A stretch of DNA of 27,322 bases from Paraphysomonas bandaiensis. Lineage: Eukaryota > Protista > Chrysophyceae. Position numbers and translations under genes: made by a program. Shown piece after piece: positions 7,385-25,490 of this stretch. Below the pieces are notes generated by a model. That model saw only the letters and a program-made list of their open reading frames with translations. It had not been told where the DNA came from and searched no databases. The DNA lies in contig CBFFRP010000600.1 of the NCBI GenBank assembly GCA_965644295.1, forward strand, positions 1 through 27,322. Direction: 5' to 3'. The first letter of the stretch is position 1; every line of letters starts with the position of its first letter.

Positions 7385-7438
7385 CGTTGTGTTGTGCATA
7401 CTTCGGTTGGTTAAGATTTTTGTCCTCCACAGAATGTA

Positions 7439-7487
7439 TCAGAGTTCAAATTCAGTTGAATCATCGTTGTCATAATTGTCACCAAAT
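7439..7487 (-). CDS. Probable last exon: (V)FGDNYDNDDSTEFEL*
   Basis: Acceptor TTTTATCAG after a 60-bp intron. If unspliced, the protein stops at 7544 instead. Confidence 0.65.
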
Positions 7488-7547
7488 CTGATAAAAAGTA
7501 ATTATTGTTAAAATCACAAAATACATATTCGAGTTTTTTATCCTTAC

Positions 7548-8756
7548 ACTTCTTTGAATATGTCAGGCCATTCGAGCTCACTATCAGAGGAGAAATCCAT
7601 ATCTAGCAGATGCGAAACATTACTCACAGCACTGGAACCATCGGGTGCGGTATTGTGTTGAAGTGTGAGACTTGTTTTCTCAGCAGGTCGAAAATTACTG
7701 GAATCACCATATGAAGAATTTGAAACAGCAGCAGCATCTTCGGCATCTGTGTCAGCAGCAGCAATGAGATCAAGTTCAGTTGCTGGTAGAAGTGGGTCGA
7801 TGGTGGTATCGGGCCCCACTTCTACAATGGAGGGGAAATCATTCATGTGTCGCTGCTTATGGATAGTATGGTCACTGCTGGAGAGGTGACGGGGACTGTT
7901 TCCCTCTTCCGTGGCTACATGAGCACTATCAGTATTCAGATGCTGAGTTCCCTCCTCTCCAGGAACACAAGAAGGAGCAGGTGACACTAATGCTGGGCAT
8001 TGACCAACTTTATTCGAAATTCGCTCTTCAGCTTGATTTTTCCACGCGGAGAGATATTGGTATCCGACATACACTACAAGTAGCAACAGAAAAATGAAAT
8101 GTATGGGATGATTCCACATATACTGCCACATCATGATCAGAGATACTGCAAAGAGTGGCTGGAGAAGATGAATGATCATGCGCTGCCAAGTGCTGCTCAC
8201 TGCGCCGAGTTGTTGAATCAAGAGAGATAACAGAGCTATCACAGAGAAACGTCTCAAATACGTTCGACCTGAAGGTACCACTGCACCACTTCTATAGTAA
8301 AATTCACTTCTGTCTTTCCAATTCTTAGCCACTGCACCCGGATAAAGGCTGTGATAGGACCGCACAATTGCGCTCTCCAATTGATACGGGAAAAATTTGG
8401 CAACATTTACGGATACAAACGTATACTGAGGCGTATCAAGTATCAGATCGTTCGTTTCTTCTGACCTATTGCTGATACTTTCAATTGCATTGTAGAGTGC
8501 AGTTTGAGCAGCCATGACTTCATACCGGACTAAACTTGGAATGACAAAATGAATTATGGCAACTTCAGACGACTCATACAGCAAAATCTCAAATAGAAAT
8601 TGCAGTATGCATGCAAAAAGAAACATCATCTGCCACTCGAGTCCTCGTTGCAGACCTCGTAACATAGAGTAAAAAATAAAGCAGAGATTCAACAGCACAA
8701 CCAAAGCCCACATTATGCCTTTTAGAAACTTTGAAACAACGTAGGTGTGGCGAAAT
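7548..8756 (-). CDS. Exon: TM4, TM5, 2-3 further hydrophobic helices and a low-complexity cytoplasmic tail
   Basis: Acceptor TTTGCAG|A, donor GT|GTAAGG; overlaps ORF 7544..8773. Confidence 0.85.
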
Positions 8757-8829
8757 CTGCAAAACCACAACACAGCAAATATGAGATATCAGCAGTGGTT
8801 TATTAGTGTATCATTAATAGTCAACTCAC

Positions 8830-8872
8830 TCTTCCTCTGATTTCGTATCAAATATTTTGGCTGCCGGTGACG
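8830..8872 (-). CDS. 43-bp exon: ASPAAKIFDTKSEEE
   Basis: Acceptor TTTGTAG, donor GA|GTGAGT; phases fit. Confidence 0.8.
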
Positions 8873-8952
8873 CTACAAACACCAAGTAGGTAAGTATATT
8901 TATTGCGGTGAAGATTGGAATATCACATATGCAACATAAGAACGCTTTTTAC

Positions 8953-9134
8953 CTCTACCGAGGACATCCAGCACAAACATGTGGAGCAGCTCCAGACCAA
9001 TATATATGTCTTCAATTTGATTCAATTTATTCCGCTTGAGAGCCACTTCCTTTTTTACAAAGGCAAGGTGTTCCTTCAGTGTTTTCTCAATAATACTCGC
9101 ATACTCTGGCTTGAATTGATCATTACTTCCTAAG
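8953..9134 (-). CDS. Exon missed by the ORF track: ...IGLELLHMFVLDVLGR
   Basis: Acceptor TTGCAG, donor G|GTAAAA; phases fit both neighbours. Confidence 0.8.
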
Positions 9135-9189
9135 CTGCAAGAAACACATTAAACGCAACAAAATGAAGAACATCACATTATACACATAC

Positions 9190-9812
9190 CACCAGGCCAT
9201 CATAAACGCATCCTTTTGTCTAGTGGTTCTTAGGCATCTCATTTGCTCCGCAATATCAATGCACAGGTCTATATATAAATCATCCGTTGAGATGGACAGA
9301 ATAGTCGACGGAATTGCTGCCACTATATCCACTCCCTCGGACCGCCGGCTTACGGGACAGGGGCCGTAATAGGACTGAAAACTACTCGAATGTGGGTGAG
9401 GTGTACCCGTATTTCTGCTGATGCGCTGACTACGACTGGAACGACGTTCAATGATTTGTAAGGATGGATTTACTTCTGCGACGATACTGCCAAGCGAAGA
9501 TAGTGCCAACTGCTGGGCAGCAATACAAGAATATGGCAGGTGACGTGTGGTGGATTCAATCGATATGAAAGACGACGTTTTTCTCTTCCTCCCCACACTA
9601 CTCTTAAATTGATCAGATAAATTAGTAGTTATGGCTGACACTCGTCTGCCAAATTGAGCAGCACGCCGTTGGATCTGACCGTTTATTTGCTCAGCAGCAT
9701 TTTGCCTTGAGCAGCATGCAGTGGGAGCAGCTAGAATGTCGAATATAAAATCGACAATTGCATTTCCGAACATGCTGAAGATGGAGCATATAACAGAGGC
9801 AATCATGATAGC
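9190..9812 (-). CDS. Exon: TM3 and cytoplasmic loop
   Basis: Acceptor CATTAG|GCT, donor TG|GTATGT; overlaps ORF 9123..9806. Confidence 0.85.
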
Positions 9813-9876
9813 CTAATGAACACATACAGACGAGATGTAAAGACCAATGCTAATATGGAGAAAGGGGTCTATGTAC

Positions 9877-10041
9877 CTTCAGAGTAACCTCAGGGCTAAC
9901 AAATACACACGAGTATCCCCCAACCGTGTCATCATCTTCAACCCACTGACACACTTTCTGGGACGAATCTAGCATCGACTTCTCAGTTGCGCACTGTGAG
10001 GCAGTGATATGAGCCTCGCATTTTCCATTGTCTTCTGGATA
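9877..10041 (-). CDS. Exon missed by the ORF track: Cys-rich loop YPEDNGKCEAH...CQW...CVFVSPEVTLK
   Basis: Acceptor ATATAG preceded by a GCTAAT branch site; 55 open codons; donor AAG|GTACAT. Confidence 0.85.
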
Positions 10042-10091
10042 CTATATGAACGTCATTAGCATTACGAAAAACTATATTAATGCAACTATAC

Positions 10092-13000
10092 CTCAAAGTC
10101 ATACAACAACGCCAGGAAAAACATCAGCATAGAAAGTGTCGTTAACAGGTGCAGCAACACTCGAATTCTTTGGTTCACTGTATTCGTATAATCTTTTGAG
10201 AGAACTAAAGCTATGTAACGATGATGGCTCTTAAGCTCTCTCCACAATCGACTCCACGGCGATTCTGTGTTGTACACTGCCGGGAAAACTTCCTTTACAT
10301 ACGAATGAAGTCGCATTTTCATCGAGTCCGTGGTAATTGCATTTTGGGAAGCACTATTCACGTCTGGACTCGGGATTGTCGCACATTTTAATTTCTCCCT
10401 TTTGGAACCATACGCTGACGTTGCCAACATATAACACATTGCAAGGAATCCCATGCCCCAAACTGTCCCAAACAACAATACAACCAACAATACTGCTTGC
10501 AAGTCCTCAGGTGAATCGAACTCCTGAGCTAGAACAACAGTTGCAGAAAAGTCGCCAGCAACGTACTCTGACGTGCTCACGAGCTCCACATACCCCGACT
10601 CTCGCAGAATCACCTGCTCTTGTCCTGTCTCATCCACGCGTCGCTGAGAGGGAGAACGGTTTGTATCATACGATGACAGTTCATCACCTCCGAATTGATA
10701 TCCTATTGAAGTGAGCCGACACAAGCATGTGGTGTTCCACGCAGTATAAGAGTCAACAGTGCAGTTGAAGTTCCCTCTGGTAGACAAGACTCGGCAATGA
10801 GGTTCAGAGAAAATATCCGGACAATGTAGCCTTACTTCTGCGGCAGTGCCATTACAAGCGACGTTCACAGCTGACGGGCGACAGGGTACTATGTGAGTGG
10901 TGTACACATCATGATCACAAGTCACGTTAAATGTGGTATTGCTGGCGTGTACTCGGCCGTAGTAGATAGGATTATTATTTTGTATAATTATCTTGAAAGA
11001 ATCGTTGGTGTATATCGAGCCATCAATAGCCATTTGCAACACATCCGAATTGTAATTCCCATTGTCATAAAGCTTCGACCGAATACTACTCAATGAAACC
11101 TTTAAACTCCGCGAGGGGTGCCGTGTACTATTTCTATGAAATTGGAGAGACGAAGGCAGTAATCCAGCCGACGTCTTTGCAAATGACTGTGGTACTGCCA
11201 TTGAAATATCTTCATTATTAACTGAAGAGGTAAAAACTTCTGTGATTTGTTGAAATGACTTTCGTAAAATCCGGTTCCCGCGTTGGCCCTCAATCAGAGA
11301 TCTTCTTACACCTGACCCATACGTGTCCAGTGCGGACGCAACTCGGGACGCGATGAATGAGCTCTTGTTGAGGAGGAGGCTGCCGTGAGGATGAGTGATA
11401 CTCGACGAGGCCAATGAGGATGACAAAGTATTCATTGAAACAGTGGCAATGCTATCTACTGCTGTCAGAGTGTCACTATAATATGCCTCATATGCGTCCA
11501 CCGATAGCAGTGTAGAGTTCCTTAAAATCGCATCAGCAATATTGAGACCATGCTCTGCCCCCACTTCAGATAGTTCACTCGATTGTGTCGTAAGTGTAAC
11601 TAAAATTTGTTGCCACTCCAAAATCGACTCCACAGTTGGATCATCCACTCTAGTGACACCATCTAGCTCATTCAGATTGGCTTCTCTCATAATAGTGCGT
11701 ACTCTCGCCTCCTCGGCTGTATACTCACAAAACAAACCACTGAATCCTTTATCACATAGACACTTCGCCTCACATGAAGAGTCAATCAATAGACACTCGG
11801 ACACAGCAGCTCCGCTGTCACTGTCCTGAAGTATGCAAGTGCCTCGATGCGAGCAGTTGCCGGTACATGTCTTCCGAAGATAATCACAAACGGAGGGTGA
11901 CTCTGTAATCTTACAGTACTCCCATACACTGCAGTCATAGTCAGTGTCACAAATCACACCAGGAGAATGTGTTAACATATCGCTTTCAGGTACACAACCA
12001 TGGTTAGATGCACCCTCTTCTCCTACATACCCAGCCAAGCATGATCCACATGTATGATCAACACTAAAACACTCATGACGGTTCAGAGTGGTACAGTTGG
12101 GTGCTGAGGAGCAGTTCTTGGTATTCAGATAAGAACTGGACAATGAGAGGATTTGCTTCGTCAACTCAATATTGTTTCCACTCGATTCTAGTTCCAATCG
12201 AAACTTCTCACGTGCTAAAGTTGTCGAGAGGGCTGTATTAGAACGAACCACAACTGACGTCTGCAACCGAGAAGCTGCATCCAAACTATCCAGCACACGA
12301 ACATAACACAACAATGTGTATCCATTCATACTGTCCCCAGGTGGAAATGTGGAGCTGGCATAAGACATCTCCAACCGACTTCTCACAATCGGATAGTGGC
12401 CATCCTCCACATAACCCATTACATAGGACAATGGCAAGTCTTCATCAGACCAAGACTCCGCAATGAGCGTAAAGACTGTATCCCACGCTATACCTGAGGG
12501 AGGGAACACTGAAAGTAGACCAGGCTGAGGAGGAGTATTAAACATCACTGTCAATGATACTGTGGACGAGCCACAGGTAAGTGAAAATACATAGGGAACC
12601 GACCGACCAGGAATAGAGCCGGCACTAACAACCAAATTGACTGACTGTAGCCCTTTTGCTAGTAATACATACGTTGCCGTAGATGTGATAGAAGCCAGAT
12701 CAACAGATGGCTCGTTGATAGCCCAAAATGCTGATTGGGCCACACTTAATTGCGCAGTTCCCAGCAAAACCAGAGAAGACAAAGGGTTGACACCATTCGC
12801 TGCTCCGCTTCTCCTTATAGACACAATCGGAGCCAATGCTTCAGTCACTCGCACAACCACTGAGCTCTCCGCTTGCCTGCCGTCAGCAACACTAAGCACT
12901 TCCACACTTATCGAATACTCCGAGTGCTCCTTTGTCTTATTCGTTGTAAATATATGAAGTAAATGTGGAGTTGTGATAGCATTTGATTGTATATTCAAAT

Positions 13001-16000
13001 CATCACACCGCAGAAGGAGAGCTGGAAACAACTGCATACAAGTCCAGCGGAATTCAAACCCACTGCTCTCAGCTGGAGGGCGTAATTCGGGTGGAATATT
13101 TTTATCATAACTGCCAGATGCATCCAATAACACACTTCCGCCGATTCGCAATGATTGCTGTGATCCTCCCTCAATGATTGCCACAATATCGGACTGAACT
13201 ACTGACACGTATACAACTGTGGATGAGGACAGCCCCGACAGAGAGTTTGTCACAGATAACTTTATTTCGTAAACAGAACTTACGTTAAAAGAATAAGGTA
13301 GCAACTTAAATTTTCTCGGGTCACTCGACAACGACACTAACTCAAAGTGCTCCACTTCATCCTCGAATATTTTCCAATCATAGATTAAGTTGGAATACGA
13401 TGCAGAACCGTCGCATTCAGTTAAAAAAGCATTAGACTGCAGTACCAGAGGAGTGTAAGTGAATATCTGTCGAGAGAGTTGTCCCACCATAGAAACATAC
13501 GGCAGAATATCATTTACGGTTTTTATGATAGCTATGGCAGAGCTGCATTCACCGAAAAAATTGCACAGCCATAGCTCAAAAATGTACCTATAACCACCTT
13601 GAAATAATTGCGCTGGCATTGCAGGTGGTGGGCTAATCACGTAATTCTCTATAAGCCATTCCTGAACTGTATGGACGGTATCGCTAAAACTGGTCACAGT
13701 GATGTTGAAGTGTTTCCATGGTCGACCACCCGAACCAGAGGAGGCAGTAATATCGATCACAGGTCTGTCGCAGGGACCGGAGACTTTTGGGTGTGTCACA
13801 ACGAGGGTGGGTGAGATGGGGTCGTAGGGGGCAGCTAAAACCATCTCTGTCCTGTTCACAGTAGCCCAGCCAGTACACTCTGACGATGTGGAGGTGCATT
13901 GAGCTCTCAGTTTACCCCGCAGTAGCACCACACTATCACCCACTTCAGGTAGAAGAGGTCCTTTGAAATACACAGTAAGTGTGGTGGCCGAGGTCCAAAG
14001 GCAGTCCGACGATAAGGCCCCAGCTACATCCAGGAGACGAGAGCACTTGAAATATGAGGAATACTGCGCCTTGTCTGTAGGCGAATCAAATTTCAGGACA
14101 GCGGACTCACCACTCTTTGAGAACTGCGCTGACATTAAACGCGGGGTGCTGGGTTCTACTTCAGAGGGCTCTACAGTGAACGACTGCCCACTTCGGAAGA
14201 TTACATCATACTCCTGCTGCACTGCAAAATCCATCATAGTCACCTGTAGTGTGTACAGTCCCGGCGCACAGTTGGCGACAGTGAAGTAATGTGTCTTCGA
14301 CCATGAGGAACGTGTAACAGTCACAATGTCATCCAGAAAGGGGGATACAGTGTACGAACCACTGCTGTTTGACACCCCAGCAGATATCCACATACCACTG
14401 CTGGATGACGGAGCTGCCGAAAGGGTTACTACAACCATATTCCAGCCCACACTATTTTCTTGCAGTACAAACATATTCAAATCCACAAATATGCTCTTAC
14501 AACAGAGAGTTTCCCAAACGACTGCATTCGAGAGCATTTCTTCATACGAGGGAGCTAACAGGTGATTGTTTTGCGTGACACAATAGAGTGTGTAATTCGT
14601 GGACGGTGTTAGAGATGTTATTGTGATTGAGGCGTTAACAGAAGCATCGTCCACGTAGTCAAAATTGTTTGTAGAAATTACAGAATTTACAGAGTCGACG
14701 ATTACCATAGATTCAAAGCTTGCGCAATACACATAGCCTCTGTTAGAGAGCTGAATTGAAAGTGTAACGTGATCTCGATACACAGTCCAGTCCATATGTA
14801 ATATCTCAGGTAAACGTGCAACTGAAGGAGCATGCGTCGATGGAAAAATCGAATGTAGTTGTCCAGATGGCAGTGCAGTAGGTTGGACAAATGGTGGTGC
14901 TGTTGGTTCACCAAATGGCTGTCCTGTGGGTATTCGAGATGGTTGACTTGATGACGGTAGTGTTGGAATCCGAGATGGCTGTACTATAGGTTGTTCTGAT
15001 GGTAATCTAGAAGAAATTCCAGATGGTTGTCCTGTTGATTCACTTGATGGCAGTCCTGCTGGTTCACTAGATGGTTGCCCTGTTGGTACACTTGACGGCT
15101 GTCCACTAGGTTGACCAGATGGTTGTCCACTGGGTTGACCAGATGGCTGTCCAGTAGGGATCCCAGATGGTTGTCCACTAGGTTCACCAGATGGCGGTTC
15201 ACTAGGTAGGCCAGATGGTTGTCCACTAGGTTGACCAGATGGCTCACCTGTGGGTTCACTAGATGGCTGTCCAGTAGGGATCCCAGATGGCTGTCCTGTG
15301 GGTTCACAAGATGGCGGTTCACTAGGTAGGCCAGATGGTTGTCCACTAGGTTGGCATGATGGCTGCCCCGTAGGTTGCCCAGATGGCGGTCCACTAGGTT
15401 GACCAGATGGCTCACCTGTGGGTTCACTAGATGGCTGTCCAGTAGGGATCCCAGATGGTTGTCCACTAGGTTGACCAGATGGCTGTCCTGTCGGTTCACC
15501 AGATGGCGGTTCACTAGGTTGACATGATGGCTGTCCAGTAGGGATCCCAGATGGTTGTCCACTAGGTTGACATGATGGCTGTCCTGTCGGTTCGATTGAT
15601 GGCTGTGCACTGGGTTGACCAGATGGCTCACCTGTGGGTTCACTAGATGGCTGTCCACTGGGTTGACCAGATGGCTGTCCAGTAGGGATCCCAGATGGCT
15701 GTCCTGTGGGTTCACAAGATGGCGGTTCACTAGGTAGGCCAGATGGTTGTCCACTAGGTTGGCATGATGGCTGCCCCGTAGGTTGCCCAGATGGCGGTCC
15801 ACTAGGTTGACGAGATGGCTGTCCTGTCGGTTCACCAGATGGCGGTTCACTAGGTTGACCAGATGGCTGTCCAGTAGGGATCCCAGATGGCTGTCCTGTG
15901 GGTTCACCAGATGGCGGTTCACTAGGTAGGCCAGATGGTTGTCCACTAGGTTGGCATGATGGCTGCCCCGTAGGTTGCCCAGATGGCGGTCCACTAGGTT

Positions 16001-19000
16001 GACCAGATGGTTGTCCACTAGGTTGACGAGATGGCTGTCCTGTCGGTTCACCAGATGGCTCACCTGTGGGTTGACATGATGGCTGCCCAGTAGGGATCCC
16101 AGATGGTTGTCCACTAGGTTGACCAGATGGCTGTCCTGTCGGTTCACCAGATGGCTCACCTGTGGGTTGACATGATGGCTGTCCAGTAGGGATCCTAGAT
16201 GGCGGTCGACTAGGTTGGCCAGATGGCTGTCCTGTGGGTTCACAAGATGGCGGTTCACTAGGTAGGCCAGATGGTTGTCCACTAGGTTGACCAGATGGCT
16301 GCCCCGTAGGTTGCCCAGATGGCGGTCCACTAGGTTGGCCAGATGGTTGTCCTGTGGGTTCACTAGATGGCTGTCCAGTAGGGATCCCAGATGGCTGTCC
16401 ACTAGGTTGACCAGATGGCTGTCCAGTAGGGATCACAGATGGCTCACCTGTGGGTTGACATGATGGTTGTCCACTAGGTTCATCAGATGGCTGCCCAGTA
16501 GGGATCCCAGATGGTTGTCCACTAGGTTGACGAGATGGCTGTCCTGTCGGTTCACCAGATGGCTCACCTGTGGGTTGGCATGATGGCTGTCCAGTAGGGA
16601 TCCCAGATGGTTGTCCACTAGGTTGGCCAGATGGCTGTCCTGTTGGTTCACCAGATGGCTCACCTGTAGGTTGACCAGATGGTTGTCCACTAGGTTGACG
16701 AGATGGCTGTCCTGTCGGTTCACCAGATGGCTCACCTGTGGGTTGGCATGATGGCTGTCCTGTCGGTTCACCAGATGGTTGTCCACTAGGTTGGCCAGAT
16801 GGCTGTCCTGTTGGTTCACCAGATGGCTCACCTGTAGGTTGACCAGATGGTTGTCCACTAGGTTGACGAGATGGCTGTCCTGTCGGTTCACCAGATGGCT
16901 CACCTGTGGGTTGGCATGATGGCTGTCCTGTCGGTTCACCAGATGGCTCACCTGTAGGTTGACCAGATGGTTGTCCACTAGGTTGACGAGATGGCTGTCC
17001 TGTCGGTTCACCAGATGGCTCACCTGTGGGTTGACATGATGGCTGTCCAGTAGGGATCCCAGATGGTTGTCCACTAGGTTGACCAGATGGCTGTCCTGTT
17101 GGTTCGGTAGATGGTTGTCCACTAGGTTGACCAGATGGCTGCCCCGTAGGTTGCCCAGATGGCGGTCCACTAGGTTGGCCAGATGGTTGTCCTGTGGGTT
17201 CACTAGATGGCTGTCCAGTAGGGATCCCAGATGGCTGTCCACTAGGTTGACCAGATGGCTGTCCAGTAGGGATCACAGATGGCTCACCTGTGGGTTGACA
17301 TGATGGTTGTCCACTAGGTTCATCAGATGGCTGCCCAGTAGGGATCCCAGATGGTTGTCCACTAGGTTGACGAGATGGCTGTCCTGTCGGTTCACCAGAT
17401 GGCTCACCTGTGGGTTGGCATGATGGCTGTCCAGTAGGGATCCCAGATGGTTGTCCACTAGGTTGGCCAGATGGCTGTCCTGTTGGTTCACCAGATGGCT
17501 CACCTGTAGGTTGACCAGATGGTTGTCCACTAGGTTGACGAGATGGCTGTCCTGTCGGTTCACCAGATGGCTCACCTGTGGGTTGGCATGATGGCTGTCC
17601 TGTCGGTTCACCAGATGGTTGTCCACTAGGTTGGCCAGATGGCTGTCCTGTTGGTTCACCAGATGGCTCACCTGTAGGTTGACCAGATGGTTGTCCACTA
17701 GGTTGACGAGATGGCTGTCCTGTCGGTTCACCAGATGGCTCACCTGTGGGTTGGCATGATGGCTGTCCTGTCGGTTCACCAGATGGCTCACCTGTAGGTT
17801 GACCAGATGGTTGTCCACTAGGTTGACGAGATGGCTGTCCTGTCGGTTCACCAGATGGCTCACCTGTGGGTTGACATGATGGCTGTCCAGTAGGGATCCC
17901 AGATGGTTGTCCACTAGGTTGACCAGATGGCTGTCCTGTTGGTTCGGTAGATGGTTGTCCTGTAGGTTGACTAGATGGTTGTCCTGAAGGGAAAGGGGTC
18001 GGTGCTGATGTGGGCCTCAAGCATTCATGGTAACTGGTTTGTGTGAGGTAGAATGTTGTTAATTGAGTCATTGTGCATAGCTCGGAAGGGTAGACACCTG
18101 TGAACATATTGCCATCACCCCTTAGAACTCGTAATTTAGTTAGACTGGAAAAAGAGTCGGGGAGAGGACCCGTTAAGGAATTGTCATATAGATAGAGAAC
18201 ACTAAGAGAAGTCATCTGACCCAGTGATGAGGGGAGAGTACCCGTTAAGGAATTGTCACGTAGACGGAGATCACTAAGAGAAGTCATCAGTGATGAGGGG
18301 AGAGGACCTGTTAAGGAATTCTCAGATAGATAGAGTTCACTAAGAGAAGTCATCTGACCCAGTGATGAGGGGAGAGGACCCGTTAAGGAATTGTCATATA
18401 GTTCGAGTCTACTAAGAGAAGTCATCTGACCCAGTGATGAAGGGAGAGGACCCGTTAAGGAATTGACATATAGATAGAGTTCACGAAGAGAAGTCATCTG
18501 ACCCAGTGATGAAGGGAGAGGACCCGTTAAGGAATTGGAAGATAGACTGAGAACACTAAGAGAAGTCATCTGTCCCAGTGATGAGGGGAGTGTTCCGATG
18601 AGAGAGTTGACACCAATATTCAAATATGTCAATGCAGTCATATCGCTGATTGATGAGGGGAGAGATCCTGATATATCATCATCCCATAAGTCCACTCTGG
18701 TTATGTTCGATCCTGTGCAGGTGACTCCAGTGAAGCTGCACTTGTTCCCCACATCCGCACAGGTCCACTCAGACCATGCGGAGGTAACATCAGTCGCCTG
18801 AATGAAGTCACACAGCGCTGCCTCTTCCAAGTTAATTGTCGGTTGTCCTGAAGGGAAAGGGGTCGGTGCTGATGTGGGCCTCAAGCATTCATGGTAACTG
18901 GTTTGTGTGAGGTAGAATGTTGTTAATTGAGTCATTGTGCATAGCTCGGAAGGGTAGACACCTGTGAACATATTGCCATCACCCCTTAGAATTCGTAATT

Positions 19001-19052
19001 TAGTTAGACTGGAAAAAGAGTCGGGGAGAGAACCCGTTAAGGAATTGTCATA
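10092..19052 (-). CDS. Rest of the large exon: solenoid 7, Pro-rich stalk, FN3-like, REJ/PKD-like, EGF-like, GAIN/GPS-like, TM1-TM2
   Basis: FN3-like ITSLTPSTNYTLYC (~14580-14630). REJ-type motifs IDITASSGSGGRPW, LLDASGSYD, FRWTC, NTPP..G.LSV.P..G....T.F.L....WSDEDLPLSY (~12280-13830). EGF CSHRGTC...CLCDKGFSGLFC (~11720-11870). TM1 ~10421-10503. Splice donor GAG|GTATAG. Confidence 0.85.
14870..17990 (-). repeat. Coding minisatellite with a 12-bp unit (xQPS/xEPT tetrapeptides, roughly 260 units); mucin/extensin-like stalk
   Basis: Pro every fourth residue. Higher-order 840-bp tandem duplication (16269-17120 matches 17109-17960). Confidence 0.95.
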
Positions 19053-22000
19053 TATAGATAGAGATATCTAAGAGAAGTCATCTGACCCAGTGATGAGGGG
19101 AGTGTACCGATGAGAGAGTTGTAACCAATATCCAAATATGTCAATGCAGTCATATCACCGATAGATGAGGGGAGAGGACCCGTTAAGGAATTGGAATATA
19201 GATGGAGATTACTAAGAGAAGTCATCTGACCCGGTGATGAGGGGAGAGGACCCGTTAAGGAATTGGAATATAGATAGAGATATCTAAGAGAAGTCATCTG
19301 ACCCAGTGATGAGGGGAGTGTACCGATGAGAGAGTTGTAACCAATATCCAAATATGTCAATGCAGTCATATCACCGATAGATGAGGGGAGAGGACCCGTT
19401 AAGGAATTATAATGTAGACGGAGACTACTAAGAGAAGTCATCTGACCCAATGATGAGGGGAGAGGACCCGTTAAGGAATTGCCAAATAGATAGAGAACAC
19501 TAAGAGAAGTCATCTGACCCAGTGATGAGGGGAGAGGACCCGTTAAGGAATTGTCATATAGTTCGAGTCTACTAAGAGAAGTCATCTGACCCAGTGATGA
19601 GGGGAGAGGACCCGTTAAGGAATTGGAATATAGATGGAGATTACTAAGAGAAGTCATCTGACCCGGTGATGAGGGGAGAGGACCCGTTAAGGAATTGGAA
19701 TATAGATAGAGATATCTAAGAGAAGTCATCTGACCCAGTGATGAGGGGAGTGTACCGATGAGAGAGTTGTAACCAATATCCAAATATGTCAATGCAGTCA
19801 TATCACCGATAGATGAGGGGAGAGGACCCGTTAAGGAATTATAATGTAGACGGAGAACACTAAGAGAAGTCATCTGACCCAGTGATGAGGGGAGTGTTCC
19901 GATGAGAGAGTTGGAACCAATATTCAAAAACGTCAATGCAGTCATATCGCTGATAGATAAGGGGAGAGATCCTGATATTCCATCATCCCATAAGTCCACT
20001 CTGGTTATGTTCGATCCTGTGCAGGTGACTCCAGTGAAAGTGCACTTGTTCCCCACATCCGCACAGGTCCACTCAGACCATACGGAGGTAATATCAGTTG
20101 CCTCAATGAAATCACACAGCGCTGCCTCTTCCAGGATAATTGTCGGTTCACTAGATGGTTGTCCTGAAGGGAAAGGAGTCGGGGCTGATGTGGGTCTCAA
20201 GCATTCGTGGTAACTGGTTTGTGTGAGGTAGAATGTTGTTAATTTAGTCATTGTACATAGCTCGGAAGGGTAGACATCTGAGAACATATTGCCATCACCT
20301 CTTAGATATTGCAATTTGGTTAGACTGGAAAGAGAGTCGGGGAGAGTACCCGTTAAGGAATTGTCACGTAGACTGAGATATCTAAGAGAAGTCATCTGAC
20401 CCAGTGATGAGGGGAGAGGACCCGTTAAGGAATTGAAATATAGATGGAGATTACTAAGAGAAATCATCTGACCCAATGATGAGGGGAGTGTACCGATGAG
20501 AAAGTTGTGACCAATATCCAAATAAGTCAATGCAGTCATATCGCTGATAGATGAGGGGAGAGGACCCGTTAAGGAATTGCCATATAGATTGAGATATCTA
20601 AGAGAAGTCATCTGACCCAGTGATGAGGGGAGAGGACCCGTTAAGGAATTGTCATATAGTTCGAGTCTACTAAGAGAAGTCATCTGACCCAGTGATGAGG
20701 GGAGAGGACCCGTTAAGGAATTGGAATATAGTTCGAGTCTACTAAGAGAAGTCATCTGACCCAGTGATGAGGGGAGAGGACCCGTTAAGGAATTGGAATA
20801 TAGATGGAGATTACTAAGAGAAGTCATCTGACCCGGTGATGAGGGGAGAGGACCCGTTAAGGAATTGGAATATAGATAGAGATATCTAAGAGAAGTCATC
20901 TGACCCAGTGATGAGGGGAGTGTACCGATGAGAGAGTTGTAACCAATATCCAAATATGTCAATGCAGTCATATCACCGATAGATGAGGGGAGAGGACCCG
21001 TTAAGGAATTATAATGTAGACGGAGAACACTAAGAGAAGTCATCTGACCCAGTGATGAGGGGAGTGTTCCGATGAGAGAGTTGACACCAATATTCAAATA
21101 TGTCAATGCAGTCATATCGCTGATTGATGAGGGGAGAGATCCTGATATATCATCATCCCATAAGTCCACTCTGGTTATGTTCGATCCTGTGCAGGTGACT
21201 CCAGTGAAGCTGCACTTGTTCCCCACATCCGCACAGGTCCACTCAGACCATGCGGAGGTAACATCAGTCGCCTGAATGAAGTCACACAGCGCTGCCTCTT
21301 CCAAGTTAATTGTCGGTTGTCCTGAAGGGAAAGGGGTCGGTGCTGATGTGGGCCTCAAGCATTCATGGTAACTGGTTTGTGTGAGGTAGAATGTTGTTAA
21401 TTGAGTCATTGTGCATAGCTCGGAAGGGTAGACACCTGTGAACATATTGCCATCACCCCTTAGAATTCGTAATTTAGTTAGACTGGAAAAAGAGTCGGGG
21501 AGAGAACCCGTTAAGGAATTGTCATATATAGATAGAGATATCTAAGAGAAGTCATCTGACCCAGTGATGAGGGGAGTGTACCGATGAGAGAGTTGTAACC
21601 AATATCCAAATATGTCAATGCAGTCATATCACCGATAGATGAGGGGAGAGGACCCGTTAAGGAATTGGAATATAGATGGAGATTACTAAGAGAAGTCATC
21701 TGACCCGGTGATGAGGGGAGAGGACCCGTTAAGGAATTGGAATATAGATAGAGATATCTAAGAGAAGTCATCTGACCCAGTGATGAGGGGAGTGTACCGA
21801 TGAGAGAGTTGTAACCAATATCCAAATATGTCAATGCAGTCATATCACCGATAGATGAGGGGAGAGGACCCGTTAAGGAATTATAATGTAGACGGAGACT
21901 ACTAAGAGAAGTCATCTGACCCAATGATGAGGGGAGAGGACCCGTTAAGGAATTGCCAAATAGATAGAGAACACTAAGAGAAGTCATCTGACCCAGTGAT

Positions 22001-25000
22001 GAGGGGAGAGGACCCGTTAAGGAATTGTCATATAGTTCGAGTCTACTAAGAGAAGTCATCTGACCCAGTGATGAGGGGAGAGGACCCGTTAAGGAATTGG
22101 AATATAGATGGAGATTACTAAGAGAAGTCATCTGACCCGGTGATGAGGGGAGAGGACCCGTTAAGGAATTGGAATATAGATAGAGATATCTAAGAGAAGT
22201 CATCTGACCCAGTGATGAGGGGAGTGTACCGATGAGAGAGTTGTAACCAATATCCAAATATGTCAATGCAGTCATATCACCGATAGATGAGGGGAGAGGA
22301 CCCGTTAAGGAATTATAATGTAGACGGAGAACACTAAGAGAAGTCATCTGACCCAGTGATGAGGGGAGTGTTCCGATGAGAGAGTTGGAACCAATATTCA
22401 AAAACGTCAATGCAGTCATATCGCTGATAGATGAGGGGAGAGATCCTGATATTCCATCATCCCATAAGTCCACTCTGGTTATGTTCGATCCTGTGCAGGT
22501 GACTCCAGTGAAAGTGCACTTGTTCCCCACATCCGCACAGGTCCACTCAGACCATACGGAGGTAATATCAGTTGCCTCAATGAAATCACACAGCGCTGCC
22601 TCTTCCAGGATAATTGTCGGTTCACTAGATGGTTGTCCTGAAGGGAAAGGAGTCGGGGCTGATGTGGGTCTCAAGCATTCGTGGTAACTGGTTTGTGTGA
22701 GGTAGAATGTTGTTAATTTAGTCATTGTACATAGCTCGGAAGGGTAGACATCTGAGAACATATTGCCATCACCTCTTAGATATTGCAATTTGGTTAGACT
22801 GGAAAGAGAGTCGGGGAGAGTACCCGTTAAGGAATTGTCACGTAGACTGAGATATCTAAGAGAAGTCATCTGACCCAGTGATGAGGGGAGAGGACCCGTT
22901 AAGGAATTGAAATATAGATGGAGATTACTAAGAGAAATCATCTGACCCAATGATGAGGGGAGTGTACCGATGAGAAAGTTGTGACCAATATCCAAATAAG
23001 TCAATGCAGTCATATCGCTGATAGATGAGGGGAGAGGACCCGTTAAGGAATTGCCATATAGATTGAGATATCTAAGAGAAGTCATCTGACCCAGTGATGA
23101 GGGGAGAGGACCCGTTAAGGAATTGTGAGATAAATAGAGATGTCTAAGGGAAGTCATCTGACCCAGTGATGAGGGGAGAGGACCCGTTAAGGAATTGGAA
23201 TGTAGACGGAGATCATCAAGAGAAATCATCTGACCCAATGATGAGGGGAGTGTACCGATGAGAAAGTTGTGACCAATATCCAAATAAGTCAATGCAGTCA
23301 TATCGCTGATAGATGAGGGGAGAGGACCCGTTAAGGAATTGCCATATAGATTGAGATATCTAAGAGAAGTCATCTGACCCAGTGATGAGGGGAGAGGACC
23401 CGTTAAGGAATTGTGAGATAAATAGAGATGTCTAAGGGAAGTCATCTGACCCAGTGATGAGGGGAGAGGACCCGTTAAGGAATTGGAATGTAGACGGAGA
23501 TCATCAAGAGAAGTCATCTGACCCAGTGATGAGGGGAGTGTACCGATGAGAGAGTTGTGACCAATATTCAAATATGTCAATGCAGTCATATCGCTGATAG
23601 ATGAGGGGAGAGGACCCGTTAAGGAATTGGAATGTAGACGGAGATCATCAAGAGAAGTCATCTGACCCAGTGATGAGGGGAGTGTACCGTTGAGAGAGTT
23701 GCCACCAAGTTGCAAATATGTCAATGCAGTCATATCGCTGATAGATGAGGGGAGGGATCCTGATATTCCATCATCATGTAAGTCCACTCTGGTTATGTTC
23801 GATCCTGTGCAGGTGACTCCAGTGAAGCTGCACTTGTTCCCCACATCCGCACAGGTCCACTCAGACCATACGGAGGTAACATCAGTCGCCTGAATGAAGT
23901 CACACAGCGCTGCCTCTTCCAGGTTAATTGTCGGTTCACTAGATGGTTGTCCTGAAGGGAAAGGAGTCGGGGCTGATGTGGGTCTCAAGCATTCATGGTA
24001 ACTGGTTTGTGTGAGGTAGAATGTTGTTAATTGAGTCATTGTGCATAGCTCGGAAGGGTAGACACCTGTGAACATGTTGTTCTCACCCCTTAGAACTCGT
24101 AATTTAGTTAGACTGGAAAAAGAGTCGGGGAGAGGACCCGCTAAGGAATTGTCATGTAGATAGAGAACACTAAGAGAAGTCATCTGACCCAGTGATGAGG
24201 GGAGAGGACCCGTTAAGGAATTGGAAGGTAGATTGAGATAACTAAGAGAAGTCATCTGACCCAGTGATGAGGGGAGAGGACCCGTTAAGGAATTGTAATA
24301 CAGACTGAGACTACTAAGAGAAGTCATCTGACCCAGTGATGAGGGGAGTGTACCGTAGAGAGAGTTGTAACCAATATTCAAAAACGTCAATGCAGTCATA
24401 TCGCTGATAGACGAGGGGAGAGATCCTGATATTCCATCATAATATAAGTCCACTCTGGTTATGTTCGATCCTGTGCAGGTGACTCCTCTGAAGCTGCACT
24501 TGTTCCCCACACCCGCACAGGTCCACTCAGACCATACGGAGGTAACATCAGTCGCCTGAATGAAGTCACACAGCGCTGCCTCTTCCAGGTTAATTGTCGG
24601 TTCACTAGATGGTTGTCCTGAAGGGAAAGGAGTCGGGGCTGATGTGGGTCTCAAGCATTCATGGTAACTGGTTTGTGTGAGGTAGAATGTTGTTAATTGA
24701 GTCATTGTGCATAGCTCGGAAGGGTAGACACCTGTGAACATGTTGTTCTCACCCCTTAGAACTCGTAATTTAGTTAGACTGGAAAAAGAGTCGGGGAGAG
24801 GACCCGCTAAGGAATTGTCATGTAGATAGAGAACACTAAGAGAAGTCATCTGACCCAGTGATGAGGGGAGAGGACCCGTTAAGGAATTGGAAGGTAGATT
24901 GAGATAACTAAGAGAAGTCATCTGACCCAGTGATGAGGGGAGAGGACCCGTTAAGGAATTGTAATACAGACTGAGACTACTAAGAGAAGTCATCTGACCC

Positions 25001-25250
25001 AGTGATGAGGGGAGTGTACCGTAGAGAGAGTTGTAACCAATATTCAAAAACGTCAATGCAGTCATATCGCTGATAGACGAGGGGAGAGATCCTGATATTC
25101 CATCATAATATAAGTCCACTCTGGTTATGTTCGATCCTGTGCAGGTGACTCCTCTGAAGCTGCACTTGTTCCCCACACCCGCACAGGTCCACTCAGACCA
25201 TACGGAGGTAACATCAGTCGCCTGAATGAAGTCACACAGCGCTGCCTCTT
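17990..25250 (-). repeat. Nested LRR array: 7 capped modules starting at 25250, 24584, 23918, 22604, 21300, 20130 and 18826, with 4, 4, 13, 13, 11, 13 and 7 internal LRRs
   Basis: Module lengths 666, 666, 1314, 1304, 1170 and 1304 fit 378 + 72n (1304 = 1314 + 2 - 12). Confidence 0.92.
19037..21526 (-). CDS. Middle segment of the same gene: end of solenoid 4, solenoids 5 and 6, ending at the second identical frameshift
   Basis: The LRR register continues in the new frame directly after the AT insertion (DNSLTGSLPDSFSSLTKLRILRGDGNMFTG). Confidence 0.8.
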   Translation of the reverse strand, partial: YDNSLTGSLPDSFSSLTKLRILRGDGNMFTGVYPSELCTMTQLTTFYLTQTSYHECLRPTSAPTPFPSGQPTINLEEAALCDFIQATDVTSAWSEWTCADVGNKCSFTGVTCTGSNITRVDLWDDDISGSLPSSISDMTALTYLNIGVNSLIGTLPSSLGQMTSLSVLRLHYNSLTGPLPSSIGDMTALTYLDIGYNSLIGTLPSSLGQMTSLRYLYLYSNSLTGPLPSSPGQMTSLSNLHLYSNSLTGPLPSSLGQMTSLSRLELYSNSLTGPLPSSLGQMTSLSRLELYDNSLTGPLPSSLGQMTSLRYLNLYGNSLTGPLPSSISDMTALTYLDIGHNFLIGTLPSSLGQMISLSNLHLYFNSLTGPLPSSLGQMTSLRYLSLRDNSLTGTLPDSLSSLTKLQYLRGDGNMFSDVYPSELCTMTKLTTFYLTQTSYHECLRPTSAPTPFPSGQPSSEPTIILEEAALCDFIEATDITSVWSEWTCADVGNKCTFTGVTCTGSNITRVDLWDDGISGSLPLSISDMTALTFLNIGSNSLIGTLPSSLGQMTSLSVLRLHYNSLTGPLPSSIGDMTALTYLDIGYNSLIGTLPSSLGQMTSLRYLYLYSNSLTGPLPSSPGQMTSLSNLHLYSNSLTGPLPSSLGQMTSLSRLELYDNSLTGPLPSSLGQMTSLSVLYLFGNSLTGPLPSSLGQMTSLSSLRLHYNSLTGPLPSSIGDMTALTYLDIGYNSLIGTLPSSLGQMTSLRYLYLYSNSLTGPLPSSPGQMTSLSNLHLYSNSLTGPLPSSIGDMTALTYLDIGYNSLIGTLPSSLGQMTSLRYLYLYMTIP

Positions 25251-25392
25251 GAGAGGCTACTGAGGCAACTGTGAGTGTTATCTGAGACACAAACACACAG
25301 AGAATGAGTGGATTCATATACATACACACATGAGGGCATCTTGTGATGCATACGAGGGACTGTCGTGTGGTGGAACTAAGAGTCCATCTCAT
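21511..25392 (-). CDS. N-terminal part: signal peptide plus LRR solenoids 1-4, ending at a frameshift-induced TAA (would be a secreted LRR-only protein)
   Basis: Hydrophobic MNPLILCVFVSQITLTVASVA, then a Cys cap (WTC..C.F.GVTC) and 24-aa extracellular-type LRRs LxxLxLxxNSLTGPLPSSLGQMTS. Confidence 0.85.
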   Translation of the reverse strand: MRWTLSSTTRQSLVCITRCPHVCMYMNPLILCVFVSQITLTVASVASQEAALCDFIQATDVTSVWSEWTCAGVGNKCSFRGVTCTGSNITRVDLYYDGISGSLPSSISDMTALTFLNIGYNSLYGTLPSSLGQMTSLSSLSLYYNSLTGPLPSSLGQMTSLSYLNLPSNSLTGPLPSSLGQMTSLSVLYLHDNSLAGPLPDSFSSLTKLRVLRGENNMFTGVYPSELCTMTQLTTFYLTQTSYHECLRPTSAPTPFPSGQPSSEPTINLEEAALCDFIQATDVTSVWSEWTCAGVGNKCSFRGVTCTGSNITRVDLYYDGISGSLPSSISDMTALTFLNIGYNSLYGTLPSSLGQMTSLSSLSLYYNSLTGPLPSSLGQMTSLSYLNLPSNSLTGPLPSSLGQMTSLSVLYLHDNSLAGPLPDSFSSLTKLRVLRGENNMFTGVYPSELCTMTQLTTFYLTQTSYHECLRPTSAPTPFPSGQPSSEPTINLEEAALCDFIQATDVTSVWSEWTCADVGNKCSFTGVTCTGSNITRVDLHDDGISGSLPSSISDMTALTYLQLGGNSLNGTLPSSLGQMTSLDDLRLHSNSLTGPLPSSISDMTALTYLNIGHNSLIGTLPSSLGQMTSLDDLRLHSNSLTGPLPSSLGQMTSLRHLYLSHNSLTGPLPSSLGQMTSLRYLNLYGNSLTGPLPSSISDMTALTYLDIGHNFLIGTLPSSLGQMISLDDLRLHSNSLTGPLPSSLGQMTSLRHLYLSHNSLTGPLPSSLGQMTSLRYLNLYGNSLTGPLPSSISDMTALTYLDIGHNFLIGTLPSSLGQMISLSNLHLYFNSLTGPLPSSLGQMTSLRYLSLRDNSLTGTLPDSLSSLTKLQYLRGDGNMFSDVYPSELCTMTKLTTFYLTQTSYHECLRPTSAPTPFPSGQPSSEPTIILEEAALCDFIEATDITSVWSEWTCADVGNKCTFTGVTCTGSNITRVDLWDDGISGSLPSSISDMTALTFLNIGSNSLIGTLPSSLGQMTSLSVLRLHYNSLTGPLPSSIGDMTALTYLDIGYNSLIGTLPSSLGQMTSLRYLYLYSNSLTGPLPSSPGQMTSLSNLHLYSNSLTGPLPSSLGQMTSLSRLELYDNSLTGPLPSSLGQMTSLSVLYLFGNSLTGPLPSSLGQMTSLSSLRLHYNSLTGPLPSSIGDMTALTYLDIGYNSLIGTLPSSLGQMTSLRYLYLYSNSLTGPLPSSPGQMTSLSNLHLYSNSLTGPLPSSIGDMTALTYLDIGYNSLIGTLPSSLGQMTSLRYLYLYMTIP

Positions 25393-25490
25393 ACTAGTGG
25401 AACAAATACCGGAATACGATCTTCAGATGGATCACAGCAAGCACTGAGTACGTACAGCAGTATGAACAACAGACACCTCAGAATGGGGGC

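What the first reader, a model, noticed from the sequence alone, without database searches (positions are those of the whole stretch)
17990..25250. Combinatorially hypervariable LRR cassettes on an invariant DNA scaffold: candidate VLR-like receptor diversification system in a protist
Seen: the main 72-bp unit is a near-constant 51 bp (AAT TCC TTA ACG GGT CCT CTC CCC TCA TCA CTG GGT CAG ATG ACT TCT CTT) plus a 21-bp window x1-x2-CTC-x4-CTA-x6-x7. Codons vary at x2 (AGT, TAT, GTT, GAT, CAT, AAT, AGA, GAA), x4 (AGT, AAT, TAT, CGT, CAT, GAA), x6 (TAT, CAT, CGT, TCT, TTT, CCT) and x7 (TAC, TCC, GAC, CAC, GGC, TTC, TAT, GTC, GAG). The same codons recur in new combinations (SVLYLHD, SVLRLHY, SVLYLFG, SVLSLSS; RYLNLYG, RYLSLRD, RYLYLYS; SRLELYD, SRLELYS), giving over 25 distinct faces with very few synonymous changes. 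Known: these are the concave ligand-binding positions, and they are Tyr/His/Arg/Asp/Ser-rich as in lamprey VLRs and plant LRR receptors. Inference: sub-repeat gene conversion or template switching plus diversifying selection generates a recognition repertoire (prey, pathogen or self). Unlike brown-algal one-exon-per-LRR shuffling, this occurs inside one exon.
Basis: partly seen in the sequence, partly recalled or inferred. Interest (0 to 1): 0.9.

Follow-up and report, generated by a model that had tools for sequence, protein, structure and literature searches.

The report
Hypervariable LRR heads on diatom receptors
A probable diatom carries a family of giant cell-surface receptor genes whose leucine-rich-repeat "heads" keep a near-constant framework and vary almost only at five ligand-facing residues per repeat; this looks like inherited, fast-evolving recognition genes of the plant resistance-gene type, not a lamprey-style system that rebuilds genes within an individual.

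Summary
On the minus strand, 57 units of 72 bp (about 65 counting cap-adjacent ones) share a near-constant 51-bp scaffold. They differ almost only at codons x1, x2, x4, x6 and x7 of xxLxLxx: 26 distinct units, 23 faces. Face codons show pN 0.50 against pS 0.13, and at least 31 nonsynonymous changes to 1 synonymous.

The array is not one solenoid. It is seven capped plant-type LRR domains in a signal-peptide, LRR×7, ~1000-aa Pro/Ser/Thr stalk, REJ, transmembrane gene. That gene carries two identical +2 frameshifts.

It belongs to a family: the scaffold core occurs 171 times in the genome, at least 60 LRR-head modules lie on about 14 contigs, and there are at least 50 REJ genes. Gene bodies 99% identical to this one carry different heads with mostly private faces.

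Shuffling with breakpoints in the scaffold is well supported. A breakpoint inside a face is clear only once. The near-independence of face positions fits recurrent single-base changes under selection.

Nothing supports VLR-like somatic assembly. Arrays are complete open reading frames, no orphan cassettes were seen among the listed hits, and the reads available were short contigs only.

My reading: an inherited, R-gene-like diversifying receptor family in a new architecture. Other scan notes cover this same stretch only, not other DNA.

The parts
25252..25392 (-). Start codon and signal-peptide-like N-terminus of the giant gene
   Evidence: ORF 21511..25392 begins here. The first 47 residues are 100% identical in the C526 paralogue.
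24637..25251 (-). LRR domain D1: Cys N-cap, first unit plus 3 scaffold units (faces SSLSLYY, SYLNLPS, SVLYLHD), C-cap
   Evidence: Pfam LRR_1/LRR_8/LRR_14.
23971..24585 (-). LRR domain D2, an exact copy of D1
   Evidence: 738 bp identical at a 666-bp shift (23847-24584 = 24513-25250).
22657..23919 (-). LRR domain D3 (12 scaffold units, internal 288-bp higher-order repeat)
   Evidence: PDB sequence hits to plant LRR-RK ectodomains GSO1, MIK2 and FLS2, E 1e-146 to 1e-136. AF2 pLDDT 76.9, with strands on x2..x7.
21341..22605 (-). LRR domain D4 (12 units), broken by a +2 frameshift
21524..21530 (-). Frameshift 1: TATAT lengthened to TATATAT (extra AT) in the last face (RYLYLY-D) of D4. A stop codon follows at 21511-21513.
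   Evidence: Sequence read directly. Paralogues are in frame at this place.
20183..21301 (-). LRR domain D5, a chimera: its start is like D4 and its last four units are like the end of D3
20723..20743 (-). Face SRLELYS, a within-face chimera. Its head matches the next face (SRLELYD) and its tail matches the previous face (SNLHLYS). The breakpoint lies in the shared CTATAT.
   Evidence: The order SNLHLYS, SRLELYS, SRLELYD is what a one-unit unequal crossover predicts.
18867..20131 (-). LRR domain D6, a copy of D4 including the frameshift (extra AT at about 19050-19056)
18574..20652 (-). Copy B of a 2,079-bp segmental duplication (copy A is 21048-23126; period 2,474 bp; one mismatch). The junction lies in a canonical scaffold.
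18003..18827 (-). LRR domain D7 (faces SVLSLSS, RELYLYV, SRLELYD, SELYLSE, one unit with a 6-nt deletion, SVLYLYD)
   Evidence: Its first 145 codons are nearly identical to the contig C584 fragment, after which the unit content differs.
15022..17990 (-). Stalk of about 1000 aa: 24-nt (8-aa, GQPSGEPT-like) repeats rich in Pro, Ser, Thr and Gly
   Evidence: period 24, 123 copies, with higher-order periods of 96, 120 and 168. Pfam PT repeat.
12224..13391 (-). REJ domain of the gene body
   Evidence: Pfam PF02010, E 1.9e-42.
7159..15021 (-). Gene body downstream of the stalk: REJ, Cys-rich EGF/GPS-like part and hydrophobic segments. The ORF ends at 10086, but homology to paralogues runs on to about 7159.
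   Evidence: 98.9-99.3% DNA identity to C566, C526 and C191.

Best explanation
This is one member, possibly a dead one, of a young, clustered, germline-encoded family of giant surface receptor genes in a silicifying marine protist that is probably a diatom. Each protein carries 1 to 11 capped plant-type LRR domains ('heads') on a long mucin-like Pro/Ser/Thr stalk. The stalk is anchored by a REJ/polycystin-1-like membrane body. Head diversity arises in the germ line over evolutionary time by four routes. (a) Homologous but unequal recombination or gene conversion occurs with breakpoints in the identical 51-bp scaffolds, caps and linkers. This duplicates, deletes and reorders whole units (72 bp), unit blocks (288 bp), domains (666-738 bp) and multi-domain segments (2.5 kb). 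It also moves heads between genes. (b) Rarely, a breakpoint falls inside a face. (c) Single-base changes occur at first and second codon positions of the five solvent-exposed beta-strand residues and are kept by positive (diversifying) selection. (d) Purifying selection, and probably conversion, keeps the scaffold constant. Shown here: the anatomy, the excess of nonsynonymous change, the recombination footprints, the family and the head/body discordance. Inferred: that selection comes from variable biotic ligands (gametes, bacteria, parasites or viruses), and that the protein is a surface receptor.
For: Architecture. Face-specific nonsynonymous excess: pN 0.50 against pS 0.13 in faces, and 0.0095 against 0.063 in the scaffold. 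Minimum changes are 31 N to 1 S, a per-site ratio of 6.4, with Fisher p = 5e-5. In the colinear comparison of W-D1 with C526-D1, face pN is 0.30, other codons have pN 0.034 and pS 0.046, and the upstream non-coding DNA is 1.9% diverged. Synonymous divergence of caps (0.03-0.19), scaffold (0.06-0.13) and faces (0.13-0.19) is of one order, so the scaffold needs no special DNA-level conservation. Recombination: exact duplications at 666-bp and 2,474-bp shifts with junctions in scaffolds; the D5 chimera and the SRLELYS within-face chimera; rare scaffold haplotype h08 joined to two unrelated faces, and face DDLRLHS joined to three scaffold haplotypes. Family: the 33-nt scaffold core occurs 171 times against 0 for the reversed control; 70 N-cap matches, at least 60 of them at 63% identity or more, on about 14 contigs; 52 REJ-body matches, 11 of them 80-99% identical. 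Bodies are 98.9-99.3% identical in DNA but heads differ in domain number (1-11) and share few faces. Two genes have REJ only 33% identical but N-caps 81-85% identical and scaffold cores matching at 32 of 33 nt, in single ORFs of 3,678 and 3,533 aa. Pseudogenes and fragments are common. The locus is held by runs from 13 studies. Silicon-transporter genes are present.
Against: This copy has two identical +2 frameshifts, so it may not make the full protein. I could not tell a real mutation from an assembly error. Expression was not examined. Positive selection is inferred from comparisons among paralogous repeats of 72 bp, where recombination and saturation distort dN/dS. The binomial test on minimum changes is only p = 0.02 for the window alone. 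Faces differ about 10 times more than neighbouring neutral DNA between 99%-identical genes, which is a lot for selection on point mutations alone. It may instead reflect older face lineages kept while the rest is homogenised, or a targeted process. The arrangement of units rests on one assembly of a 27-kb contig that is made largely of repeats.
Confidence: 0.65

Rival explanations
1. A VLR-like somatic system: individual cells assemble or edit the LRR heads by copy-choice from cassettes, giving clonally different receptors.
For: The heads are capped LRR solenoids with hypervariable concave faces. Many near-identical cassettes with 51-bp homology exist in the genome. One within-face template-switch-like chimera was found.
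Against: All listed scaffold hits lie in long in-frame arrays inside family genes, not in orphan partial cassettes around an incomplete gene. The duplications seen are ordinary tandem ones. Contigs from four differently labelled runs carry the same unit sequences with only a few single-base differences, although contigs cannot show rare variants. No somatic data exist.
Confidence: 0.03
2. Targeted germline hypermutation or very short-tract conversion is aimed at the face codons, so mutation rate rather than selection alone explains the contrast with the scaffold.
For: Faces differ by about 22% between colinear domains whose upstream flank differs by 1.9%. Identical rare scaffolds flank faces that differ at 6 of 21 nt. 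Face positions are nearly independent. Ser is AGT at face positions x1, x2 and x4 but TCN in the scaffold, recalling the codon bias of antibody CDRs (from my own knowledge).
Against: Third codon positions of the faces and the two Leu codons within the 21-bp window are as conserved as the scaffold (pS 0.13; CTC invariant; CTA in 21 of 23). A local mutator would not spare them. The pattern is what selection on amino acids predicts. A DGR-like adenine-specific process is excluded because the A of CTA and the many A's of the scaffold do not vary.
Confidence: 0.1
3. Decaying pseudogene array: the variation reflects relaxed constraint in a dead, repeat-rich gene and has no recognition function.
For: There are two frameshifts here. 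Frame breaks or stops also occur in the C566, C584, C191 and C124 copies.
Against: Relaxed constraint gives dN/dS of about 1 spread evenly. Here change is confined to 5 of 24 codons, with 31 N to 1 S, while the scaffold stays under purifying selection. Intact paralogues exist with ORFs of 2,796-6,091 aa. Apart from the two frameshifts no stop codons have accumulated, and the two copies of the duplicated segment differ at only one base.
Confidence: 0.1
4. Partly an assembly artefact: the order and number of units and domains, the 2.5-kb duplication and the frameshifts come from mis-assembly or long-read indel errors in a repeat-rich 27-kb contig.
For: The window is a whole short contig. Sister contigs end inside family genes. 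The frame breaks sit in simple runs: TATATAT here and an A-run in C584.
Against: Unit sequences are present at 95% identity or more in contigs of four independent runs, covering 26-30 of 30 bins. The face statistics do not depend on unit order. The same pattern is seen on long contigs such as C66, which is 553 kb.
Confidence: 0.12

Closest known systems
Plant LRR receptor-like proteins/kinases and R-gene clusters (e.g. Cf-9/Cf-4, Xa21; solved ectodomains FLS2, GSO1, MIK2)
   Same: Both have the 24-residue plant-type LRR (LxxLxLxxNxLxGxLPxxLGxxxx) with a Cys N-cap. PDB hits reach E 1e-146. Hypervariable xxLxLxx residues with dN above dS, clustered paralogues, unequal crossing-over, and birth and death with pseudogenes are textbook features of these plant families (from my own knowledge) and all are found here.
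   Different: There is no kinase or short RLP tail. Instead the gene has several complete capped LRR domains in tandem, a stalk of about 1000 aa and a REJ/polycystin-like body. The repeats within one gene are near-identical at the DNA level, unlike most plant LRRs. The organism is a stramenopile alga.
Ectocarpus LRR-ROCO and NB-ARC-TPR candidate immune receptors (exon shuffling; PMC3341825, PMC11378527)
   Same: Both are stramenopile families in which LRR units evolve under diversifying selection on the concave face, are shuffled between and within loci, and show high birth-and-death rates.
   Different: In Ectocarpus each repeat is its own exon and the shuffling is of exons, and the proteins are cytosolic GTPases. 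Here the array is intron-free, recombination uses the scaffold itself as homology, and the protein is extracellular on a REJ body.
Lamprey/hagfish variable lymphocyte receptors (VLR)
   Same: Both have a capped LRR solenoid with a variable concave face rich in Tyr, Ser, Asp, His and Arg, and many cassettes with short shared homology.
   Different: VLRs are assembled somatically into an incomplete germline gene from flanking partial cassettes. Here the germline genes are complete, and no orphan cassettes or somatic variation were seen.
[quoted passage not shown]
   Same: Both have an N-terminal capped LRR module, a REJ domain, a Cys-rich GPS-like region and membrane spans. In sea urchin suREJ the ligand-binding heads are reported to be under positive selection (cited in PMC4700764). 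An Ectocarpus REJ gene is a candidate gamete-recognition gene (PMC4700764).
   Different: No PLAT, PKD-repeat or channel domain was detected by Pfam. The heads are multiplied up to 11 times and hypervariable. A very long PT stalk is present.
TAL effector repeat arrays (repeat-variable diresidues)
   Same: This is an analogy only: DNA-level near-identical tandem repeats in which a few fixed positions per repeat carry all the specificity, and recombination between repeats creates new arrays.
   Different: The fold, ligand, organism and number of variable positions all differ. There is no homology.

Membership tests
Lamprey-type VLR diversification system | Incomplete germline gene with a non-coding intervening sequence in place of the LRR array | tested here: not met
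   The germline array is coding throughout: ORFs of 1,293, 802 and 2,961 aa, interrupted only by two 2-nt insertions. The C526 paralogue is a single 2,796-aa ORF.
Lamprey-type VLR diversification system | Banks of orphan partial LRR cassettes flanking the gene | tested here: not met
   The listed 100 of 171 scaffold-core hits all fall in 72-bp-spaced arrays within family genes or their fragments. The other 71 hits were not listed.
Lamprey-type VLR diversification system | Somatic, clonally different assembled genes | not testable with these tools
   Only Logan contigs of 65-200 nt could be laid. They cannot show rare variants or arrangements.
Lamprey-type VLR diversification system | AID/APOBEC-like cytidine deaminases linked to assembly | not tested
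   No search was made. Presence or absence in the genome would not be decisive.
Plant-type (PS) LRR ectodomain | 24-residue repeat LxxLxLxxNxLxGxLPxxLGxxxx forming a solenoid with beta-strands on xxLxLxx | tested here: met
   Pfam LRR_1/LRR_8/LRR_14, E 1e-98 to 1e-90. PDB hits GSO1, MIK2 and FLS2, E 1e-146 to 1e-136. AF2 strands have a 24-residue period on x2..x7.
Plant-type (PS) LRR ectodomain | LRRNT_2-type Cys N-terminal cap | tested here: inconclusive
   PF08263 scores 20.6 bits against a cut-off of 20.7, E 5.5e-4. The cap aligns to the GSO1 cap. The AF2 cap has pLDDT below 50.
PKD1 / REJ receptor family | REJ domain | tested here: met
   PF02010, E 1.9e-42, 145.9 bits.
PKD1 / REJ receptor family | GPS cleavage motif, PLAT domain and 11 membrane spans | tested here: not met
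   Pfam finds no GPS, PLAT or PKD_channel in the ORFs at 10086-11600, 9123-9806 or 7544-8773. A Cys-rich CLCRLTS stretch followed by a hydrophobic segment resembles a GPS plus first span (sequence only). Unmodelled introns could hide domains.
R-gene-like diversifying LRR receptor family | dN above dS confined to solvent-exposed xxLxLxx residues | tested here: met
R-gene-like diversifying LRR receptor family | Clustered paralogues, unequal crossing-over, sequence exchange, pseudogenes | tested here: met
   At least 7 family genes lie on contig C66. Duplications and chimeras. Head/body discordance. Broken copies.
Diversity-generating retroelement (DGR)-like mutagenesis | Variation only at positions that are adenine in a template repeat | tested here: not met
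   Face codons are mostly NNT or NNC, which resembles the DGR pattern. However, the A of the CTA Leu codon inside the window and the many A's of the scaffold are invariant. The neighbouring reverse transcriptase is an ordinary Gypsy element.

The most novel reading that the evidence does not exclude
The heads form a population-level hypervariable recognition repertoire for mating, self/non-self or parasite recognition in a diatom. Its faces would be renewed faster than selection on ordinary mutation allows, by a targeted process: very short-tract conversion among the ~170 or more near-identical units genome-wide, or local hypermutation. Such a process could also act within clonal lineages.
Probability: 0.12. 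Interest if true: 0.9.

Novelty: new variant of a known kind. Interest (0 to 1): 0.55.

Why it matters
Diatoms are major ocean primary producers, yet almost nothing is known about how they recognise mates, bacteria, viruses or parasites at the cell surface. This family gives concrete, testable receptor candidates. It has 1-11 plant-type LRR heads per protein, hypervariable at exactly the ligand-facing residues, carried on a stalk and a REJ/polycystin-like body. It also shows R-gene-style evolution, with diversifying selection plus repeat and domain shuffling, arising on a different protein chassis in a different eukaryotic supergroup and without the exon-per-repeat layout described for brown algae. 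I found no paper describing it.

Tried and rejected
(1) The exhaustive representative search with one LRR domain gave 126,200 hits, the best at 46% identity or less. The word-based search with residues 45-270 gave a best hit of 50%. Both were swamped by generic long LRR proteins from bacteria, plants and protists, so they say nothing about the family in other species.

(2) The REJ-body search found only unnamed relatives at 34% identity or less. The close subfamily therefore seems confined to this organism among the sequences held.

(3) Read laying on 21450-25400 with four runs gave only 65-200-nt contigs. It reported no indel at the frameshift, but coverage of that exact spot cannot be confirmed. 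The few variant letters may be cross-laid paralogous units. It gives no evidence on strain or somatic variation.

(4) The neighbour-chimera scan over 275 units found 2 hits, one of them trivial, against a shuffled mean of 0.37 (p about 0.06). Within-face recombination is therefore not shown to be systematic.

(5) Four-gamete incompatibilities are numerous. I rejected them as proof of recombination because pN is about 0.5, the alphabets are small, and all states are linked by single-base steps.

(6) DGR-like adenine mutagenesis was considered because face codons are NNT or NNC. It was rejected because other adenines are invariant.

(7) The idea that the scaffold needs special DNA-level conservation was rejected, because caps, scaffold and face third positions all show similarly low synonymous divergence.

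(8) Five literature searches found no description of a diatom LRR-REJ family.


Full report
WHAT IS THERE.

The finding lies on the minus strand of a 27,322-bp window that is a whole contig (C600) of a 62.5-Mb, 669-contig assembly. The genome holds several silicon-transporter genes, and earlier scan notes call the organism a marine protist, probably a diatom.

A giant gene starts at 25392 with a signal-peptide-like N-terminus. It then runs through seven separate LRR domains, D1-D7. Each domain has:
- a Cys-containing N-cap (..AALCDFIQATDV..GVTC..);
- a first unit of the ..SSISDMTAL type;
- 3-12 further 24-residue units;
- a C-cap (..LRGDGNMF..YPSELC..YHECL);
- a short PT linker.

After the heads come about 1000 aa of 8-residue GQPSGEPT-like repeats (15022-17990) and a REJ domain (Pfam E 1.9e-42). 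A Cys-rich region and hydrophobic segments follow. The ORF ends at 10086, but homology to paralogues continues to about 7159. A Gypsy-type retrotransposon occupies 149-5956 on the other strand.

Nearly all are 72 bp apart within each domain. With the cap-adjacent first units the total is about 65.
- There are 26 distinct units and 23 distinct faces among the 57.
- Among distinct units, the five face codons have pN 0.50 and pS 0.13. Scaffold codons 7-17 plus the two Leu codons have pN 0.0095 and pS 0.063.
- A conservative count of the fewest changes linking the observed codons gives 31 nonsynonymous to 1 synonymous in faces, against 2 to 6 in the scaffold (Fisher p = 5e-5).
- Face residues are S 26%, Y 23%, R 13%, D 10% and H 9%.
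- D3 matches plant LRR-receptor-kinase ectodomains (GSO1, MIK2, FLS2) at E 1e-146 to 1e-136.
- In an AF2 model of D3 (pLDDT 76.9), the beta-strands fall on x2..x7 of every unit. The variable residues are therefore the concave-face ones.

CORRECTIONS TO THE PICTURE.
- The scaffold is not a single sequence. Codons 1-6 exist in two DNA versions that differ at synonymous sites (pS about 0.5), and a third unit type (..DMTAL TYLDIGY) alternates with them.
- More than half of the units are exact copies produced by large duplications. D2 equals D1 (738 bp exact at a 666-bp shift). Positions 18574-20652 equal 21048-23126 (2,079 bp with one mismatch, period 2,474 bp).
- The frame is broken twice by the same extra AT in a TATAT run (at about 21524 and about 19050). 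Both breaks lie inside the duplicated segment.

IT IS A GENE FAMILY.
- The 33-nt scaffold core occurs 171 times in the genome with 2 or fewer mismatches, against 0 for the reversed control.
- The N-cap gives 70 matches. At least 60 of them have 63% identity or more, spread over about 14 contigs, with 1 to 11 heads per gene.
- The REJ body gives 52 matches. Eleven are 80-99% identical to this gene, and several lie in a cluster on contig C66.
- The bodies of the C566, C526 and C191 copies are 98.9-99.3% identical to this one in DNA over 4.1-7.8 kb. Their heads nevertheless differ in domain number and carry mostly private faces. C600 shares 1 face with C566, 0 with C526 and C191, and 4 with the C584 fragment.
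- Where heads are colinear (W-D1 against C526-D1), the upstream non-coding DNA differs by 1.9%. Non-face codons have pS 0.046 and pN 0.034, while face codons have pN 0.30.
- Conversely, two genes have REJ bodies only 33% identical to this one, yet their N-caps are 81-85% identical and their scaffold cores match at 32 of 33 nt, within single ORFs of 3,678 and 3,533 aa. Heads and bodies therefore have different histories, meaning head modules move between genes or are homogenised across them.
- Broken copies are common: C566 (head frame break), C584 (fragment next to an integrase ORF), C191 (stops in the body) and C124.

HOW THE DIVERSITY ARISES.

Synonymous divergence is similarly low in caps (0.03-0.19), scaffold (0.06-0.13) and faces (0.13-0.19). 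The scaffold is not specially protected at the DNA level. The whole head module is young or homogenised, and only amino-acid-changing positions of the faces have run ahead. That is the signature of diversifying selection rather than relaxed constraint or a local mutator. A local mutator would not spare the third positions and the Leu codons inside the 21-bp window.

Recombination with breakpoints in the scaffold is well documented:
- the duplication junctions;
- D5, which is a D4-start/D3-end chimera;
- rare scaffold haplotype h08, joined to two unrelated faces (DDLRLHS and SNLHLYF);
- face DDLRLHS, joined to three scaffold haplotypes;
- the C584 domain, which matches D7 for 145 codons and then switches to units found in D4.

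A breakpoint inside a face is clear once. The order SNLHLYS, SRLELYS, SRLELYD (20866-20672) is exactly what a one-unit unequal crossover within the shared CTATAT would produce. Across 275 units this is not significantly more than shuffling gives (p about 0.06).

Face positions are nearly independent, except for the adjacent pairs x1-x2 and x6-x7. However, with pN about 0.5, small residue alphabets and all codon states linked by single-base steps, recurrent substitution explains it without sub-face recombination.

WHAT IT IS NOT.

It fails the defining features of a VLR system that could be tested. The germline arrays are complete coding sequence, and the cassettes sit inside genes rather than in orphan banks. 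Somatic variation could not be examined. All runs holding the locus (20 rows from 13 studies) are kept as short assembled contigs. The four I laid show the same units with a few single-base differences and nothing more.

A DGR-like process was considered because face codons are NNT or NNC. It was rejected because other adenines never vary.

COMPARISON AND NOVELTY.

The evolutionary behaviour is that of plant LRR receptor and R-gene clusters. Among stramenopiles, it resembles the Ectocarpus LRR-ROCO genes, where diversifying selection on the concave face is combined with exon shuffling (PMC3341825). [quoted passage not shown]

The new elements are:
- multiple complete plant-type LRR heads, near-identical at the DNA level, on a long stalk and a REJ body;
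- shuffling without introns, using the scaffold as homology;
- the scale of the family in a probable diatom.

I found no description of this in five full-text searches. Searches for the family in other organisms were swamped by generic LRR proteins. The REJ body has only relatives at 34% identity or less in the protein collection.

VERDICT.

Most likely this is a germline, R-gene-like, diversifying receptor family (confidence 0.65). The window's copy is possibly a pseudogene or affected by assembly errors.

Interest is moderate to high for algal cell-surface recognition.

Noticed in passing
window 149-5956 (+): Gypsy-type LTR retrotransposon: a gag-like ORF, then a pol ORF with RT, RNase H and integrase. 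It lies just beyond the 3' end of the receptor gene. Sister contigs C566 and C526 end about where homology to the window stops (about 7159-7244).
   Followed up: partly
window 18000-25300 (-), codon usage: Ser is encoded by AGT at face positions x1, x2 and x4, but by TCC, TCA or TCT throughout the scaffold. From my own knowledge, this recalls the AGY/TCN split between antibody CDRs and frameworks. It may simply reflect mutational paths (AGT to AAT, CGT or AGA).
   Followed up: no
G000:C552:16184-23271 (-): A paralogue whose REJ body is 96% identical carries 11 LRR heads. Eight of them are spaced exactly 738 bp apart with identical N-cap scores, which suggests a very recent domain-level tandem amplification.
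   Followed up: no
G000:C366:14216-23011 (-) and G000:C66:253435-261891 (-): Two genes have REJ bodies only 33% identical to the window's, yet their N-caps are 81-85% identical and their scaffold cores match at 32 of 33 nt. Head modules appear to have been exchanged between distant subfamilies.
   Followed up: partly
L017 (G000:C584:1-4074): This 4-kb contig holds a family fragment (two LRR domains and the start of the stalk). It is frame-broken in an A-run and abuts an ORF with integrase-like sequence. Its last domain equals D7 of the window for 145 codons and then diverges by whole units.
   Followed up: partly
window 18255-18341 (-): One D7 unit has lost 6 nt of the scaffold (..SSLMTSL.. 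lacking Gly-Gln), giving a 66-bp unit and the 138-bp spacing seen between the scaffold hits at 18392 and 18254.
   Followed up: no
window 15022-17990: The stalk's 24-nt repeat has strong higher-order periods (96, 120 and 168 nt). Its G+C is 55% against about 45% elsewhere. It also keeps other reading frames open for 213-472 codons, as expected from the repeat composition.
   Followed up: no
runs X16-X20: Five marine metatranscriptome runs hold 5-10% of the sampled words of 10100-19999. This hints that this gene or close paralogues are transcribed in the sea.
   Followed up: no
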